Positions 230-29,480 of a DNA stretch of 64,000 nt are shown in pieces. Numbering within the stretch: position 1 is the stretch's first letter; every line of letters starts with the position of its first letter. The stretch is taken from positions 310,001-374,000 of the forward strand of contig JAWQFM010000022.1 in assembly GCA_033442325.1 (NCBI GenBank). The letters are read 5' to 3'. The notes below the pieces were generated by a model. It was not told the origin of the DNA, searched no databases, and worked only from the letters and a program-made list of their open reading frames with translations. Made by a program: the position numbers and the translations under genes. This DNA comes from Salpingoeca rosetta (taxonomy: Eukaryota; Protista; Choanoflagellata).

Positions 230-3646
<3,417 letters not shown>

Positions 3647-22709: not shown

Positions 22710-22858
<149 letters not shown>

Positions 22859-23192
22859 AACACACACATACACACACTCAACCCTGCACTCAACAACGGA
22901 ACCAACAGCCTGCTCAGCAACGACTTCTTCTTGTTGCTTGGTTGTGCTTGTTGTTTGGGCTGTTGTTGCGAGTTCTGAAGATTTGTGGGTGTGGGCGTGA
23001 ATATTCTTTCACAGCGTTTGCCTTGTCTCGTGTGTTGTGGTGTGAGCGGACATGCTGTTGTCGCTGCGTCGTGCTGCTGTTGCTGTTACATCTCACTGCT
23101 GTTCTTCTGCTTCTCAGCTTCGCTTATCAGCGCCGTCGCCGCTGTCCTCGCTCTGCTTTTTACCGCCCTCATCGCTACGTTGCTCTTCCAGT

Positions 23193-24373
23193 ATGAGTGA
23201 AGCAAAACCATCAGCTGCCAGCCACGAGGTTCGTGATTTGTCGTCACGGTGCGCGTGATGTGCACGCGCTGCACTCGTGCTGCGGCAGTGAAACACACAT
23301 TGGCTTGCGTGTCATCGTACAATGCACCCCCAGCGCTGCAACAGTAGTAACAGGAGTGGTTGAAGCAGGAATAGCAGTTGTTGTGATTGATAGCAACTGC
23401 ATTTGCAAATCTTGCTCTCAAATGTGGTGCTTGTGCCTTGCCCCGTGCACGTAGGCGGCATGGAACTTCTTCAACGAAACCCTCGGTGCCCCCAAGTTTG
23501 TCATGGGATCAATGGCGGAAGGATCTGACTTGCCATTCCGCTTGCTCTGGTGCGTGCACATGCATAAGCGTGTGCGTGTATCTGCGGGTAGATACGTGGG
23601 TTTTTGTTGTTGTGTGTCTGCGAACAACATCTGTGACAGTTGTTGAATCGCACAGTGTACACGTGGGTGTTGTGGGGATCGCGCGGTTTGCACTGCATTT
23701 TCCATCATCTTCCAACGTACGAGTACACTGGGTTCTTGCATTGTTCCGTTCGTCCATGTGCAGCAAGCCGTATGGTGTGCAACTGGCGTTCTCACCGCGC
23801 CTCTATGCCAAGCACTTGGTGAACGAGGACCTGTATCGTGAACAGCACATGGTCACCTGCGACGACGACCTGCCCCTCGTCACCATGGTCTGTGTGTGCG
23901 TGTGTGCGTGTATGTGTGTGTGTGTGTGTGTGCGTGTGTACATGTGTGTGCGTGTGTATGTGTGTGCATGTATGTGTGTGCGTGTGTGTGCTTCTGTGTG
24001 TGTGTGTGTGACTGCGTAGAATTTTGGGCTTACTGCACTCGGTCGTCGTTGAATCAGCACAACAACCTCACGGCTCTGCTGTGTCGCACCACCGACGTCT
24101 TGCAGCTGTGTGCAAATGAGACCAAATCCTTCGTCGAAGCCTGCAGTGTGGTGCGTGCGTGTACGATGCCCTGCTTGCGTGCACATTCGTCTGTCTGTCT
24201 GTCTCTGTCTCTGTCTCTCCTCTCGCTGCTTGGTGGCTAAGTGGTGTGAGCTTCACCATCCTTGCATTACCTCTCACCCAAACCCGTTACTTGCGCCACC
24301 CTTCTCACAGGCTGCGCCAACATGCAAGGCCTTGTGCCTTGACCTCACATGGAACTCAAAGCGAGCCATCAAC

Positions 24374-24430
<57 letters not shown>

Positions 24431-25262
24431 GTGTGCGTGTGTGCGTGTGTGTGCGTGTGTGTGTGTTCGTTGGAGCACGTGCTTACGAGTGCGGGCGTGC
24501 CAGTAATGCCCTTGAACGCCCGCCTTGCTCGTGCTCACGGCTGTGGCCATGTTGCGTGGTTCGTGGGTGGCTTCACCAGGCCAATACGGCGCATGCCTGC
24601 TGCAGCAGCGAGATCTGGTCGGGGACATGCTCACAGCAGCTACACAGCAGGGCCACAAAGGTGCAGCACGGTGTGCAGGGTGGCTTTGTTTTGTTGTTGA
24701 TGCTTGCCGCACATGTATCTAGCATGTTAGGCATGTGTGTATGTTCTCACCATACGTCCTCAGTGACTGCATCTCATACACACACACGCACACATACACA
24801 CATGCACATATACACCGACACGCACACACACATGCACACACATGCACATATACACCGACACACACACGCACATGCACACAAATACACATTGCAGTGTTTG
24901 CTGGCGTGCGCGTGACTGATGAGACGCAGGATGTTGAGGGCCTTGTGCGAATGGTGGAGAAATCAGGCTGCGTGGGCATTGTCGTTGACACACGCACGAC
25001 AGAGGAGACAGCAGCAATCTGCAACTGGGATGTCGTGGCCCGCATCAAGTGCGTCATGAACCAGAAGGCGGGCAGCATTGTTTGTGTGCATCTGTGTGTA
25101 GTTGTATGTATGTGTGTGTTTGTGTGTATGTTTGTGCGCATTCACACGTACCACGGTATGCAAACACATGTTGATGACGCAAACAAGTGAGCATCCCATA
25201 CCTCACATCCAGGGGTTTGCCGCTAACGTGCCTGCATGCGACCTGCGACCTGCTGCCCCTGT

Positions 25263-25340
<78 letters not shown>

Positions 25341-26852
25341 TCATGATGGCTTGAACTGTTCGTCTCAGGGCCCTCACGGCTCTCCCCGTATTGGCCCACG
25401 CATCTCTCAACTCCCCCAACGAGATTCAGCCATTCCTCAAACACACAGGTGCGCGCGCGCGCGCGCGTGTGTGTGTGTGTGTACTGCATGGTTAGAACAG
25501 GGTGCACGTTGTTCACAGCGCACGATATGCGATTGTGGCCGCAGGTGCTGATGCCGTTGTAGCCACGACCGAGCTCCTCTTCCAGCCAACCCTCTTCTCC
25601 CTCGAATCAACAACAGCAACAACACCTTCATCATCGACAGCAACACCTTCAGCCGTGAGTTCGCTCGATTTGGCCGCACGGTACCTGCAGCTGTTCCGAC
25701 AGCACATGGCGTTTCCGTTCTTCGCTCGCTGGCACCTCTGCCACCTCCTCCACTCCACCCTCCTCCACATGCCAGACATCTTCGACGACGTCCACAACGG
25801 TACGGGCGTTCATGTGCGTGCGTGCGTGTGTGTGCATGCGTAGATGGATGCGTGTATGGTCGGAGTGTGTGTGAATACGTGTGCGCGTAGGTTGGTGTGT
25901 GTAGTCTCGATTGCGTGTGGAAGCGTGTGTATGTTTGCGTGTACGTTTGCGTTTCATGCACAGTGCATCGCCTCTGTGTTGTCCATCACCAACCGAGCTG
26001 GCGACTGACATCTATCTGTATGCATTTGCACATTTGTGTGCGTGCATGTGTGTGCGTGTGTGTGTGTGTGTGTATGCGTGTGTGTACATCATTCCCAGCC
26101 AACACGCCGGCGGCTCTGGAGAGAGTGTTGGAAGAGATCAAGACAAAGGTGCGTAGATGTCGTGGCTACCGTTTCAAAACACACCTCGAATTCACGCACA
26201 CATGTCACACACTCATACACACAATGTCAAATGGCACAACACGACGCGCGAACGCTCGCCATACCTTAACCCCATTCGTGTGTGTGTGTGCATGTGTACG
26301 TATGTGTGTGCATGTGTACGTATGTGTGTGTGTGTGTGCATGTGTGTGTGTGCATGTGTGCGTGTATGTGTGTGTGTGTGTGTGCGTCACCAGGCTGCAG
26401 CGGCCGCGTTGGGAGCAGACGTGAATGCGTGTCGCATTTGTCCGCCGCTCGCGTATCATTCGGCCCCGGACACCGCATCCATCCTCCGATATGAAGGCGA
26501 CGTGGACCAGGTGCGGGCTTGGAATCAGAGAATAACGGCATCGGTAGAGCGGCCGGGGGGGGGCAGTAGTCGCTGTAGATTTGCGTGCATATTCCTGGTG
26601 CAGAGTAAATGCGAGACCCTGACGTGTTGCATGATGCCGTTGCGCCGCCGAGCTCATTCTCCCATGCTTCTCCCACCAGGCTGCGGCTGCGCGGTCGTGG
26701 GCGAGTGACCTGGTTGCTGCCGGTGTGCTGCCGTCGAATCACGTGGATATGCACAAGCGGCTCGAGTACGATCCAAATTGCGGTCACGAGCGCAAACTCA
26801 ACCAGCTCGCAAAGCGCAAGGTGTGGTGCACCTGTGCTTCGACGAACAGCGC

Positions 26853-26925
<73 letters not shown>

Positions 26926-28051
26926 AATGTGTGTGTGTGTGTGTGTTTGAATGTGTGTGTGTGTGTTTGAATGTGTGTGTGTGTGCGTGCACGCGAAATA
27001 CAGCGCACATATTGCATCTCGTGCTTTCGATGACATGTGCTGTCTGGACTGCTTGCGTTGATGCATCGGCTCACCATGCTCATGGTATCCTCCTCCACCT
27101 TGGTGCGGGTTGATGCAGTTGAAGCGAATTGGGTTCCAGAAGCAGCAGAAGGAGGAAAAGGCAAAACAACGCAAGCAACGACGACGGGCAGCACGTACGC
27201 AGCAATTGGCGCTGTGGTTATGCTGTGGACTTATGTCAGGATTCAATTTGTGACCACCACAACCTACTCCTCACACACACCTACACCCACACACAACCTC
27301 CCCACCCACACACGTAACCCAACGAGCAGGGGAGGCCGGGGCTGAGGATCAAGCGGAGAAGAAGGCAAAGACGGAGCAAGTGGAGAAGAAAACGAAGCAA
27401 GAGCAGCGGGAAGAGCGACGCGCGCGTGTGCTGGCAGCCATGCAGTCGCCAACCGCCATCCGAGTTGCCATCGACATGGGCCTTGGTGACGCCATGAACA
27501 GGAAAGAGATTGTCAAGTTGAGCGATCAGATTCGACGCCTCTACGGCGCTAACCTCCGCGCACAGGTAACACTTCGCTATGGTGATTGCATTTGCTTTTG
27601 TTTTGGTTGTGCCGTTTGATTTTGTGTTGGTTGTGTTTGTTGTTCGTGTGTGATCACCACAATCGTATGTTCGCTTTGCTCTCAACATGTTCTCTGACTG
27701 CAAGTCGTTGTCTGGGCGTCTCTTCCCACTTGCTCACAGCACCACCCAACTCTAAACTTCCCCAATACCCCTCCCCTCTTCCCCCGCACACACTCTCTCG
27801 CTCCCTCCACACTCATCTGTCTTCGCTGCCGCTGTTCAGCACCCGTGCCACCTGCACCTGACCAGTCTCGATCCCAACGGCCTCCCATATCGCCTGTGCA
27901 AGCAGCGCAATGTTGGATTCGACGACTACTTGGCCACCATGACTGACAAGACTCACATTCACCACTTTGACCCAAGCGAGGTGCGTTGGTGTGTATGAGA
28001 ACGTGTGTGTTCGTGTGTGAATGAGAATGGTTGTCATGCACTTGTGTGTGT

Positions 28052-28123
<72 letters not shown>

Positions 28124-28517
28124 CGTGCATGCTGTGCAGGTGTGCGTGTGGGCGTGATGGTTGCGTGCGAATTCTTTCAGCCACGACAGCTCACCTGCGT
28201 CTCAATTCCCCTCTGCTCGTTGTTCATGTGGTGTTCAGATTGTCTTCCTCACGCCAGATTCCCCAAACGTTCTCGTCGACCTTGTTCCCTCTAAGGTTTG
28301 CACACTCGCTCCTCTTGTTGTGCTGATGCCTGCAAGCATTCAGCGGCGATGTGCTGAAGAGCCGCAGTGCCGTTCGCTTTTGACTTCTTCTTGATCAACT
28401 CCTCCATATCGGTGTTCTGATTGTGCTTGCCAGACGTATGTGTTTGGCGGTTTGGTGGACGAGAGCATCCAGAAAAACTTCACGCTCAACCGTGCACAGA
28501 AGGTCGGTCGGACGTGG

Positions 28518-28576
<59 letters not shown>

Positions 28577-28867
28577 TGGGTTGTTTGGATGTGGTCGATA
28601 GGTTGTGTGCTTGTGTGTGCTTGTGTGTGTGTGTGACCAGGGTGCATGTGTGTTCTCCTTCACTGTTGTTTTGCTTGTGCTGTGTACCACTCATCTCGAC
28701 CCCCTCCTTCTCCTCCTCATTCGTCATTGACGTTCTGTCGTGCTCTTCACCACTGCTGCTATCCCCCTCCCCCTTCCAAGGCTGGCATTGTGACTGCTCG
28801 TTTGCCCATTCTGGAGTTCAGCAACGCAAAGGCCACCAAGTATGCACCCGTCCTCTCCATCAACCAG

Positions 28868-28943
<76 letters not shown>

Positions 28944-29337
28944 CTCATCACACACACACACACCATATGCGCCACAGGTGTTTGATGCGTTTCTGAAGGT
29001 GATACATGGCGAGGGGTGGCGTGAGGGCCTTCGTGCAGCCGTGCCGGAGCGAAAGGGATTTGCGCTGTACTCTGAGGAGAAAATCAACGCCACGGTGCAA
29101 CACATGAAAGAACAGAGCGTGGATGGCGTTTACATGCAGGCAACTAGCTACGACGACAACAACAACGACAAGGCCGATGGTGGTGGCGTTGATGTGGTGG
29201 ACGCGAAGACACCGGCACCAGCAGTGGCGAATGCAACGAACCAACAAGACGCCGAGCAGCTCGCAGCCCCGATGGACGAGGGCGAAACGAAGGGTGAGCA
29301 CTCTGAGGAAACTGCACCTGCACCAGCCGCAGCTTGA
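23193..29337 (+). CDS. Fusion of a degenerate (probably inactive) DUS1-like tRNA-dihydrouridine synthase domain and a TRMT10B-like tRNA purine-9 N1-methyltransferase (SPOUT)
   Basis: 19 phase-consistent GT-AG exons: 23193-23228, 23455-23549, 23764-23887, 24106-24150, 24311-24374, 24580-24660, 24895-25048, 25369-25448, 25545-25799, 26099-26148, 26394-26510, 26680-26820, 27119-27194, 27330-27565, 27840-27980, 28239-28295, 28434-28502, 28781-28867, 28978-29337. The N-half follows DUS1 ([61 protein letters not shown]). The C-half has TRM10 motifs ([53 protein letters not shown]). Confidence 0.82.
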
Positions 29338-29396
29338 ATTACTCTGATGTACGCGCATGCACGTGTGGTAGAGTGCATAGGGGTGTCGTGCAGCCG

Positions 29397-29480
<84 letters not shown>

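What the first reader, a model, noticed from the sequence alone, without database searches (positions are those of the whole stretch)
23193..29337. Pseudo-dihydrouridine synthase fused to a TRM10 tRNA methyltransferase: a candidate built-in tRNA-binding scaffold
Seen: 19 GT-AG exons splice in phase with no stop from a DUS1-like domain through a basic helix ([10 protein letters not shown]|[14 protein letters not shown]) into an intact-looking TRM10 SPOUT domain. The DUS half keeps the order and spacing of the fold but has lost nearly every FMN-binding or catalytic signature: APM>GSM, TPM>SPR, xQF>TML, NxGCP with the catalytic Cys>DLTWN, KxR>GVR, HGR>DTR, ANG>AHA. Established: DUS enzymes grip the tRNA elbow/D-loop; Trm10 methylates purine 9 next to the D-arm; human mitochondrial TRMT10C needs the moonlighting dehydrogenase SDR5C1 as a tRNA platform; other tRNA modifiers use inactive partner subunits (Trm6, ADAT3). 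Inference: a cofactor-less DUS has been kept as a cis-acting tRNA recognition module for Trm10. I know of no description of this architecture.
Basis: partly seen in the sequence, partly recalled or inferred. Interest (0 to 1): 0.86.

Follow-up and report, generated by a model that had tools for sequence, protein, structure and literature searches.

The report
Dead DUS1 domain fused to TRM10
This choanoflagellate (Salpingoeca rosetta) gene joins a catalytically dead copy of a tRNA dihydrouridine synthase to an intact-looking TRM10 tRNA methyltransferase in one protein; at least five choanoflagellate lineages keep the fusion and I found no paper describing it, but what the dead half does is still inferred.

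Summary
All 19 GT-AG exons splice in phase into a 755-codon frame. This is public gene PTSG_08201 of Salpingoeca rosetta (XP_004991225.1). The public model uses the same junctions between the two halves but lacks exons 1, 2 and 4, which orthologues support.

Both halves pass Pfam thresholds: Dus 69 bits, tRNA_m1G_MT 95 bits. The same fusion occurs in Barroeca monosierra, Salpingoeca infusionum and Hartaetosiga gracilis. The last two are complete ORFs on single transcriptome contigs. A TARA Oceans scaffold carries the same gene order.

The DUS half derives from DUS1. It shares two intron positions and phases with the genome's true DUS1 gene. It has lost the catalytic Cys (an invariant Trp in all four species) and the Lys, His and Asn/Gln flavin and substrate residues. 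S. infusionum keeps an intermediate state. The methyltransferase half is closest to TRMT10B and keeps the catalytic Asp and SAM loops.

New here: an in-frame ATG at 23052 adds 47 acid-free residues that look like a mitochondrial presequence.

A scaffold role for the dead DUS domain is plausible but untested.

The parts
23052..23228 (+). Exon 1. It encodes a 59-aa N-terminus whose first 47 aa have 4 Arg, no Asp/Glu and 15 Ser/Thr, which looks like a mitochondrial presequence.
   Evidence: in-frame ATG right after the stop at 23043-45; 802 aa against 789-801 aa in orthologues. P0007 and P0008 N-termini are likewise acid-free. Inferred; no RNA evidence.
23455..23549 (+). Exon 2: DUS strand 1, with the APM motif degenerated to GSM. 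Absent from the public model.
   Evidence: The orthologue P0003 has ..[18 protein letters not shown]...
23764..23887 (+). Exon 3: TPM>SPR and the Q-F position >TML. The 3' junction (phase 0) coincides with an intron of the true DUS1 gene.
24106..24150 (+). Exon 4 ([15 protein letters not shown]). Skipped in the public model but present in all three orthologues.
24311..24374 (+). Exon 5: former catalytic loop, DLNLGCPQ > LDLTWNSK. The catalytic Cys position holds a Trp that is invariant in all four species.
24580..24660 (+). Exon 6: the DUS1-type G-x-YGA motif is retained.
   Evidence: Dus profile 99-118, weak exon-level hit.
24895..25048 (+). Exon 7: KxR>GVR and HGR>DTR. The 3' junction splits a Lys codon AA|G at the same place and phase as in the true DUS1 gene.
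25369..25448 (+). Exon 8: ANG>AHA (flavin phosphate loop).
25545..25799 (+). Exon 9: end of the barrel, a species-specific Ser/Thr-rich insert, and the DUS helical domain.
   Evidence: phmmer hits P0001, P0002, P0003. Searches show the helical domain modelled in the orthologue.
26099..26148 (+). Exon 10: start of the extension after the helical domain ([14 protein letters not shown]), conserved among the fusion proteins.
26394..26510 (+). Exon 11: extension after the helical domain, with conserved C-x-x-x-P and GD-x-DQ motifs.
26680..26820 (+). Exon 12: end of the DUS-side extension, ..[12 protein letters not shown]. The equivalent exon lies on the TARA scaffold L017.
27119..27194 (+). Exon 13: start of the basic helical linker ([14 protein letters not shown]..).
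   Evidence: linker has 21 K/R in 56 aa, pI 10.4. It is fused with exon 14 into one exon in L017.
27330..27565 (+). Exon 14: rest of the basic TRM10 N-terminal region and the first SPOUT strand and helix ([18 protein letters not shown]).
27840..27980 (+). Exon 15: TRM10 SPOUT domain.
28239..28295 (+). Exon 16: TRM10 SAM loop (FLTPDSPN).
28434..28502 (+). Exon 17: TRM10 catalytic-Asp motif (YVFGGLVDE).
28781..28867 (+). Exon 18: TRM10 knot region (ARLPI .. LSINQ).
28978..29337 (+). Exon 19: end of the SPOUT domain (VFDAF .. PERKGF), an acidic species-specific tail, and the TGA stop.

Best explanation
This is one nuclear gene of Salpingoeca rosetta, PTSG_08201, with a corrected 5' part. From N to C the roughly 802-aa protein has five parts. 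(1) An acid-free N-terminus that looks like a mitochondrial presequence. (2) A TIM barrel plus helical domain descended from a duplicate of the DUS1 gene (tRNA U16/U17 dihydrouridine synthase). It has lost the catalytic Cys, which is now an invariant Trp, and the Lys, His, Asn and Gln that hold FMN and the target uridine. (3) A conserved extension of about 85 aa. (4) The basic helical N-terminal region typical of Trm10 enzymes. (5) A TRMT10B-like SPOUT methyltransferase domain with its catalytic Asp and SAM loops intact. Shown here: the gene structure, the homology of both halves, the loss of the DUS catalytic residues, the origin from DUS1, and conservation of the fusion in at least five choanoflagellate lineages. 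Inferred: the protein methylates N1 of purine 9 of tRNA. The dead DUS domain no longer binds flavin or reduces uridine. It is kept because it still grips the D-loop/elbow region next to position 9 and so positions or selects tRNAs for the TRM10 domain in cis. This would parallel the role of the SDR5C1 dehydrogenase for human TRMT10C. The substrates may be mitochondrial tRNAs.
For: Gene structure: 19 in-phase GT-AG exons. The public model P0001 uses the same junctions from exon 5 to exon 19, including 26510/26680, 26820/27119 and 27194/27330.

Single mRNA in relatives: P0007 (S. infusionum, 801 aa) and P0008 (H. gracilis, 789 aa) are 'type:complete' ORFs on single transcriptome contigs that carry both domains.

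Other lineages: P0003 (B. monosierra, 798 aa) has both domains. TARA scaffold L017 carries a pseudo-DUS exon, the ..RKLNRLAKRK exon, and one exon joining the basic linker to the TRM10 start, all on one strand.

Domain identity: Pfam gives Dus 68.9 and 57.5 bits and tRNA_m1G_MT 95.3 and 96.3 bits. An AF2 model of the orthologue (pLDDT 81) matches human Dus2 and T. thermophilus Dus, barrel plus helical domain, at TMt 0.74-0.77. It matches TRMT10C and TRMT10A at TMt 0.89.

Dead active site: the alignment against DUS1-type enzymes and the genome's own Dus genes shows the losses. The Trp at the Cys position is invariant.

DUS1 origin: the best database relatives are DUS1-type. Two intron positions and phases are shared only with the true DUS1 gene on contig C5.

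Selection: the four DUS domains form one clade (100/96). They keep 26-51% identity, against 54-61% for TRM10 and 9-30% for the tails.

The methyltransferase looks active: the D of IDM, TPDSPN, GGLVDE, LSINQV and RKG are all kept.

It is an extra paralogue: true DUS1 (C5) and a canonical TRM10 (C15) exist elsewhere in the genome.
Against: No RNA reads could be laid on the S. rosetta locus, so an additional TRM10-only transcript from an internal promoter is not excluded. Nothing here measures tRNA binding, flavin binding or methylation. The pseudo-DUS domain is net acidic (pI 5.3-6.0), which does not favour RNA binding, although true DUS1 sequences range from pI 5.25 to 8.3. The domain-domain docking test gave no verdict. 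Mitochondrial targeting rests on N-terminal composition only, and the B. monosierra gene model does not show it. The TRM10 half is nearest to TRMT10B, which I recall as non-mitochondrial in humans. The subfamily position of the DUS domain in the small tree is only weakly resolved (82/86).
Confidence: 0.5

Rival explanations
1. The fusion is real and the DUS domain is dead, but it is kept for something other than tRNA recognition. Candidates are protein-protein assembly (a platform for other tRNA-processing enzymes), autoinhibition or regulation of the methyltransferase, folding and stability, or import.
For: The domain is conserved. It is acidic. The new invariant Trp and the conserved extension after the helical domain are not tRNA-binding features known from DUS enzymes. 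SDR5C1 in the human complex also serves as an assembly platform (PMC10941002).
Against: The DUS helical domain, which is the RNA-binding module of the family, is retained and modelled with confidence. DUS1 and Trm10 act on neighbouring parts of the same tRNA region, which makes co-binding the simplest reading.
Confidence: 0.27
2. The DUS half is still an enzyme, so the protein is bifunctional. It would make dihydrouridine, or carry out another flavin reaction, with non-canonical residues, at least in some species.
For: S. infusionum P0007 keeps APM, the Gln, the Asn and K-I-R, and has a Cys one residue before the canonical position.
Against: In S. rosetta, B. monosierra and H. gracilis the Cys, Lys, His, Asn and the ANG phosphate loop are all replaced. 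Even S. infusionum has His>Glu and Trp at the Cys position.
Confidence: 0.07
3. The DUS-like part is a decaying remnant with no function, carried along as an N-terminal extension of a working TRM10.
For: It evolves faster than the TRM10 half: 26-51% identity against 54-61%.
Against: The frame is open across 11 exons in S. rosetta and in four other lineages. The fold is predicted with pLDDT around 90. More than 30 positions in the DUS half are invariant, including residues newly fixed in the fusion. The truly unconstrained tails are at 9-30% identity.
Confidence: 0.08
4. Gene-model artefact: two adjacent genes (a DUS pseudogene and a TRM10 gene) were joined only by prediction.
For: No S. rosetta reads were laid.
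Against: Complete single-contig transcriptome ORFs span both halves in two other species. The conserved residues run straight across the junction (..RKLN-x-LAKRK + basic helix). There is no in-frame stop and no conserved start between the halves.
Confidence: 0.03

Closest known systems
Human TRMT10C-SDR5C1 (MRPP1-MRPP2) m1R9 methyltransferase subcomplex of mitochondrial RNase P
   Same: A TRM10-family methyltransferase works with an oxidoreductase-fold protein whose redox chemistry is not needed for methylation. The fusion's linker plus SPOUT part superposes on the TRMT10C chains of the cryo-EM complexes over about 297 columns. The N-terminus looks like a presequence.
   Different: Here the partner is covalently fused and is a TIM-barrel flavoenzyme fold (DUS1), not a Rossmann-fold dehydrogenase. 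It is a true pseudoenzyme, whereas SDR5C1 remains an active dehydrogenase. The methyltransferase is nearer to TRMT10B than to TRMT10C: 131-145 bits against 77 bits. A review states that a mitochondrial TRM10 has been found only in metazoans (PMC10941002).
TRMT10B (vertebrate m1A9 methyltransferase of tRNA-Asp)
   Same: It is the closest named relative of the SPOUT half. A lizard TRMT10B-type protein, P0009, is 36-42% identical. Atlas clusters named 'TRMT10 homolog B' score 0.94 and TM 0.88. UniRef names the S. rosetta protein 'homolog B'. The motif GGLVDE-x-IQK is shared.
   Different: TRMT10B has only a basic N-terminal region of about 100 aa and no DUS domain. Orthology was not tested with a proper tree that includes TRMT10A and TRMT10C.
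DUS1 / DUS1L (tRNA-dihydrouridine(16/17) synthase)
   Same: The fold is the same (TIM barrel plus helical domain). The N-terminal W/F-x-F-F..LG-x-P motif and the G-x-YGA motif are shared. Two intron positions and phases match the S. rosetta DUS1 gene.
   Different: The catalytic Cys, the Lys of KxR, the His of HGR, the Asn of NxGCP, the Gln and the ANG loop are replaced. The domain is fused to a methyltransferase.
tRNA-modifying enzymes with an inactive or RNA-binding partner: Trm61-Trm6, ADAT2-ADAT3, METTL2-DALRD3
   Same: The logic is the same: a catalytic subunit relies on a paralogue-derived or tRNA-enzyme-derived non-catalytic module for substrate recognition. DALRD3 targets arginine tRNAs for METTL2 (PMC7237682). 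The Trm6 and ADAT3 examples are from my own knowledge.
   Different: Those partners are separate polypeptides and, for Trm6 and ADAT3, paralogues of the catalytic subunit itself. Here the dead module comes from a different enzyme family and sits in the same chain.
Animal DUS2 (Dus domain plus dsRBD)
   Same: It shows that the DUS family combines with extra RNA-binding modules in one chain. It is the best solved structural match for the DUS half.
   Different: In DUS2 the DUS domain is the active enzyme and the appended module helps it. Here the roles are reversed.

Membership tests
Trm10/TRMT10 family (SPOUT m1R9 tRNA methyltransferases) | Sequence match to the family profile above the curated threshold | tested here: met
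   PF01746 scores 95.3 bits (cut-off 27.3) on P0001 residues 438-606. The precomputed PF27710 TRM10_TRM10A domain is also attached.
Trm10/TRMT10 family (SPOUT m1R9 tRNA methyltransferases) | SPOUT fold superposable on solved Trm10 structures | tested here: met
   The AF2 model of orthologue P0003 gives TMt 0.88-0.89 to 5nfj (TRMT10C) and 4fmw (TRMT10A), and 0.83-0.86 to 4jwh. This was tested on the orthologue, not on the S. rosetta sequence.
Trm10/TRMT10 family (SPOUT m1R9 tRNA methyltransferases) | Conserved catalytic Asp (V-D motif) and SAM-binding loops | tested here: met
   GGLVDE, TPDSPN, LSINQV and P-x-RKG are invariant in all four fusion proteins and align to the S. pombe Trm10 motifs. 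The role of the Asp is from my own knowledge of the literature.
Trm10/TRMT10 family (SPOUT m1R9 tRNA methyltransferases) | Basic N-terminal tRNA-binding region before the SPOUT domain | tested here: met
   The linker has 21 K/R in 56 aa and pI 10.4. It is helical in the model.
Trm10/TRMT10 family (SPOUT m1R9 tRNA methyltransferases) | m1G9 or m1A9 methyltransferase activity | not testable with these tools
   Needs an enzyme assay or tRNA sequencing of a knockout.
Dus family (FMN-dependent tRNA dihydrouridine synthases) | Sequence match to the Dus profile above threshold | tested here: met
   PF01207 scores 68.9 bits (P0001) and 57.5 bits (P0003, profile 5-252), against a cut-off of 20.4.
Dus family (FMN-dependent tRNA dihydrouridine synthases) | TIM barrel plus C-terminal helical domain | tested here: met
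   Foldseek: 6eza (human Dus2) TMt 0.77; 3b0u (T. thermophilus Dus) TMt 0.76, rmsd 3.4 over 324 columns; DusC 0.72.
Dus family (FMN-dependent tRNA dihydrouridine synthases) | Catalytic Cys in the N-x-G-C-P loop | tested here: not met
   The position is Trp in all four fusion proteins. The loop reads DLTWNS in S. rosetta.
Dus family (FMN-dependent tRNA dihydrouridine synthases) | FMN- and substrate-binding residues (APM, Gln, Asn, Lys of KxR, His of HGR, ANG loop) | tested here: not met
   S. rosetta has GSM, TML, Asp, GVR, DTR and AHA. The controls (DUS1-type P0010-P0012 and the genome's own Dus genes) keep all of them. The domain is therefore a homologue but not a functional member, that is, a pseudoenzyme.
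TRMT10C-type mitochondrial m1R9 methyltransferase with an oxidoreductase scaffold | Orthology to TRMT10C | tested here: not met
   TRMT10C scores 77 bits, against 131-145 bits for TRMT10B-type P0009 and 90-95 bits for TRMT10A and yeast Trm10.
TRMT10C-type mitochondrial m1R9 methyltransferase with an oxidoreductase scaffold | Mitochondrial localisation | tested here: inconclusive
   With the start at 23052 the N-terminus has 4 R and no D/E in 47 aa. P0007 and P0008 have 7-8 K/R and 0-1 D/E in their first 60 aa, but P0003 does not. No targeting predictor or experiment was available.
TRMT10C-type mitochondrial m1R9 methyltransferase with an oxidoreductase scaffold | Dependence of methylation on the non-catalytic oxidoreductase-fold partner | not testable with these tools
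   Needs assays of the protein with and without the DUS-like domain.

The most novel reading that the evidence does not exclude
The fusion is the mitochondrial m1R9 tRNA methyltransferase of choanoflagellates. If so, the closest relatives of animals already had a mitochondrial TRM10 that depends on a catalytically irrelevant oxidoreductase-fold scaffold. In choanoflagellates that scaffold is a dead DUS1 in cis; in animals it is SDR5C1 in trans. The scaffold-dependent design of the animal mitochondrial RNase P methyltransferase module would then either predate Metazoa or have arisen twice. The invariant Trp that replaces the catalytic Cys would hold a flipped-out D-loop base in the former flavin pocket.
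Probability: 0.2. Interest if true: 0.85.

Novelty: new variant of a known kind. Interest (0 to 1): 0.62.

Why it matters
Trm10 enzymes are unusual monomeric SPOUT methyltransferases, and how they choose their tRNAs is poorly understood (PMC9508554). The one well-studied helper system, TRMT10C-SDR5C1, is regarded as an animal invention (PMC10941002).

This locus offers a naturally fused, conserved, dead DUS1 domain on a TRM10 in the sister group of animals. That gives a tractable single-chain model for scaffold-assisted substrate selection, because S. rosetta can be transfected and genome-edited. I found no paper describing a dihydrouridine synthase pseudoenzyme. The S. infusionum protein also gives an evolutionary series from partly intact to fully dead.

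If the presequence-like N-terminus is real, the locus also bears on when mitochondrial m1R9 and its machinery arose. On the practical side, it corrects the public gene model PTSG_08201, which lacks three exons.

Tried and rejected
The share of sampled words in runs X4-X12 (0.30-0.33) fits spliced transcripts that hold both halves: by my own arithmetic about 0.28 is expected for all exons and about 0.14 for one half. The kind of those runs is only guessed, so this is weak.

Exon-by-exon searches. Pfam and own-genome family searches on single exons were nearly blank because the exons are short. They became informative only once the database protein P0001 was found.

Full-length search. The search for homologous proteins with the full length was swamped by low-complexity words.

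Subfamily from solved structures. The PDB sequence search could not tell DUS subfamilies apart. Human Dus2 was top for both the fusion and an unrelated Dus of the same genome, so a 'DUS2-like' reading was rejected. Database neighbours, Atlas names and shared introns favour DUS1.

Tree. The small DUS tree shows that the fusion domains form one clade but does not firmly place them.

Domain docking. Complex prediction of the DUS half against the TRM10 half of P0008 gave no verdict (score 0.00). It is neither for nor against.

PRORP. An own-genome search with PF16953 was blank and its controls were blank too, so it is uninformative.

Whole-protein Atlas search. No usable hit.

Intron comparison with a lizard TRMT10B-type gene. 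One junction nearly coincides (..INQ|VF..) but the phase differs. It is not used as evidence.

Charge of the pseudo-DUS domain. It does not discriminate.

Full report
**What is there.** The window is eukaryotic, about 55% G+C, with introns full of (GT)n/(CA)n. It has 19 exons on the + strand between 23193 and 29337, every intron is GT-AG, and the 2268-nt frame has no stop (755 aa).

**Identity of the locus.** A phmmer search of 1.84 billion representatives with exon 9 alone returned a 699-aa protein, P0001, at 100% identity. P0001 is PTSG_08201 / XP_004991225.1 / UniProt F2UIA4 of Salpingoeca rosetta, which UniRef names 'tRNA methyltransferase 10 homolog B'. This agrees with the organism named by an earlier agent of this scan.
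- It starts at an ATG inside intron 2 and skips exon 4.

**Both halves are real domains.** On P0001, Pfam gives tRNA_m1G_MT 95.3 bits (cut-off 27.3) and Dus 68.9 bits (cut-off 20.4). On the B. monosierra orthologue it gives 96.3 and 57.5 bits. Spliced residues 22-282 align to a bona fide Dus gene of the same genome at E 1e-24.

An AlphaFold2 model of the orthologue (P0003:105-798, ten-row alignment, mean pLDDT 81, barrel about 90) was compared with solved structures by Foldseek.
- It matches human Dus2 and Thermus Dus over barrel plus helical domain: TMt 0.74-0.77, rmsd 3.4-4 Å over about 325 columns.
- It matches TRMT10C and TRMT10A SPOUT domains at TMt 0.89.
- It matches the TRMT10C chains of the mitochondrial RNase P/Z complexes over about 297 columns, which includes the helical N-terminal part.

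**It is one gene, and the fusion is conserved.** A region search with the TRM10 part found three more proteins with precomputed Dus plus TRM10 domains.

| Protein | Species | Length | Source |
|---|---|---|---|
| P0003 | Barroeca monosierra | 798 aa | genome-based model |
| P0007 | Salpingoeca infusionum | 801 aa | transcriptome, 'type:complete' ORF |
| P0008 | Hartaetosiga gracilis | 789 aa | transcriptome, 'type:complete' ORF |

- P0007 and P0008 each lie on a single assembled transcript, which is RNA-level evidence for one mRNA in relatives.
- The 131-aa environmental protein P0002 lies on TARA Oceans scaffolds.
- On the 1885-bp scaffold L017 three exons lie on one strand: a pseudo-DUS exon, the ..HERKLNRLAKRK exon, and a single exon that runs from the basic linker straight into ..AVRVAVDMGL..RRLYG of TRM10. 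This is a fifth lineage with the same gene order.
- Conserved residues run across the junction in all species.
- The two-gene artefact is therefore very unlikely.
I worked beside those places afterwards and sent none of their letters to any search tool.

**The DUS half is a pseudoenzyme derived from DUS1.** One search aligns the fusion proteins with DUS1-type enzymes (P0010-P0012) and with a Dus of the same genome. The references keep APM, TPM, Q-F/L, DLNLGCPQ, K-I-R, HGR and ANG/VNG.

| Motif in DUS1 | S. rosetta | S. infusionum |
|---|---|---|
| APM | GSM | APM |
| TPM | SPR | SPM |
| Q-F | TML | Q-F |
| NLGCP loop | DLTWNS | N-L-C-W |
| K-x-R | GVR | K-I-R |
| HGR | DTR | EGR |
| ANG | AHA | ASG |

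- B. monosierra and H. gracilis are similarly degenerate to S. rosetta.
- S. infusionum is therefore an intermediate state.
- The catalytic Cys position is a Trp in all four proteins.
- Origin from DUS1: the nearest database relatives are DUS1-type, and Atlas clusters named tRNA-dihydrouridine(16/17) synthase score 0.95.
- Within the genome I found the following Dus genes by tblastn. The subfamily labels rest on motifs I know from the literature.
  - A true DUS1 on contig C5.
  - DUS2-, DUS3- and DUS4-like genes on C13, C3 and C2.
  - An extra intronless Dus on C4.
- Two introns of the fusion gene sit at the same place and phase as introns of the C5 DUS1 gene. One is ..VTM|LCAN.. against ..IVQ|FCGN.., phase 0. 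The other is a Lys codon split AA|G before A-x-x-x-PV. The C2 and C4 genes have no intron at either place. This points to a DNA-level duplication of DUS1.
- The PDB could not resolve the subfamily, since Dus2 was top for any eukaryotic Dus. A small tree shows the fusion domains as one clade (100/96) but places that clade only weakly.

**Selection.** Pairwise identity among the four species was measured per region.

| Region | Pairwise identity |
|---|---|
| DUS barrel | 26-51% |
| Helical domain | 29-48% |
| Extension after the helical domain | 26-40% |
| TRM10 SPOUT domain | 54-61% |
| Terminal tails | 9-30% |

The open frame across 11 exons, the confident fold and the newly fixed residues show that the dead domain is maintained, although under weaker constraint than the methyltransferase.

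**The methyltransferase half.**
- It keeps the Trm10 signature positions: the D of I-D-M, TPDSPN, YV-x-GGLVDE, ARLP, LSINQV and P-x-RKG.
- It is mutually closest to a TRMT10B-type protein. P0009 scores 131-145 bits.
- The fusion's TRM10 domain scores 85-95 bits against TRMT10A and the yeast Trm10s, and 77 bits against TRMT10C.
- P0009 itself scores 85 bits against TRMT10A and 65 bits against TRMT10C.
- The Atlas agrees with the TRMT10B affinity.
- The 'basic helix' is simply the basic N-terminal region that Trm10 enzymes have, with pI 10.4.
- A second, canonical TRM10 gene (..VYIIGGLVDHNSCKGLT..) lies on contig C15.
- The fusion is therefore an extra paralogue of both families. The organism has not given up D16/17 or ordinary m1G9.

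**A new point: the N-terminus.**
- The added 47 residues contain 4 Arg, no Asp/Glu, 15 Ser/Thr and 14 Ala/Leu.
- The protein becomes 802 aa, matching the orthologues.
- The two transcript-derived orthologues also begin with 60 residues holding 7-8 K/R and 0-1 D/E.
- This composition is typical of mitochondrial presequences, which I state from my own knowledge. No predictor was available, and the B. monosierra model does not show it.
- A review states that a mitochondrial TRM10 and m1R9 in mitochondrial tRNA are known only from metazoans (PMC10941002). A mitochondrial TRM10 in choanoflagellates would therefore be notable.

**How it most likely works.**
- Shown: a single chain with a dead DUS1 fold, a basic helical region and an intact-looking TRM10 domain, conserved in choanoflagellates.
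- Inferred: m1R9 methylation of tRNA by the SPOUT domain. The flavin-less DUS fold would still engage the D-loop/elbow region that DUS1 normally recognises, next to position 9, and would supply affinity or selectivity in cis.
It rests on analogy with TRMT10C-SDR5C1, METTL2-DALRD3 (PMC7237682), Trm6 and ADAT3.
- The main rival is a role other than tRNA binding (assembly platform, regulation).
- Residual catalysis is conceivable only for S. infusionum.

**Novelty.** Searches for Trm10 with choanoflagellate, dihydrouridine synthase with pseudoenzyme, Trm10 with dihydrouridine synthase and fusion, and the locus tag found nothing describing this. The protein and its two Pfam domains are visible in public databases, so the architecture is unreported rather than hidden. 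I class it as a new variant of a known kind: a TRM10 enzyme with a built-in pseudoenzyme partner.

Noticed in passing
window 23193-24374 against the public model XP_004991225.1 (P0001): The public gene model PTSG_08201 starts at an ATG inside intron 2 (MCSKPYG..) and skips exon 4 (24106-24150). It therefore lacks the first barrel strand and one helix. The orthologues show that these exons are real.
   Followed up: yes
window 23052-23192: An in-frame upstream ATG sits directly after a stop codon. It adds 47 acid-free, Arg/Ser/Ala/Leu-rich residues, so the N-terminus looks like a presequence.
   Followed up: partly
L001 (G000:C4:1884005-1887829), ORF 1108-2715: An extra, intronless Dus gene (535-aa open frame with all catalytic motifs and a long N-terminal extension) exists beside DUS1-, DUS2-, DUS3- and DUS4-like genes. 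It groups with the C2 gene in the small tree. Its origin and function were not examined.
   Followed up: partly
L016 (G000:C15:942335-945460), exon at about 1498-1629, minus strand: A second, canonical TRM10 (TRMT10A/yeast-type motif VYIIGGLVDHNSCKGLT) is present. Only one exon was identified.
   Followed up: partly
window 22800-29470, introns of the gene: Nearly every intron and both flanks carry long (GT)n or (CA)n microsatellites, for example 24375-24470, 25262-25338, 26862-26990, 28046-28122, 28514-28574, 28870-28945 and 29403-29480.
   Followed up: no
L017 / L018 (TARA Oceans and another ENA metagenome scaffold): An uncultured marine relative has the same gene but lacks S. rosetta introns 8 and 13, so exons 8+9 and 13+14 are each one exon. 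Intron gain or loss has been recent within the clade.
   Followed up: partly
window 25620-25670 (exon 9): A Ser/Thr-rich insert (..[18 protein letters not shown]..) lies between the barrel and the helical domain. It is specific to S. rosetta; the environmental relative has a different insert at the same place.
   Followed up: no
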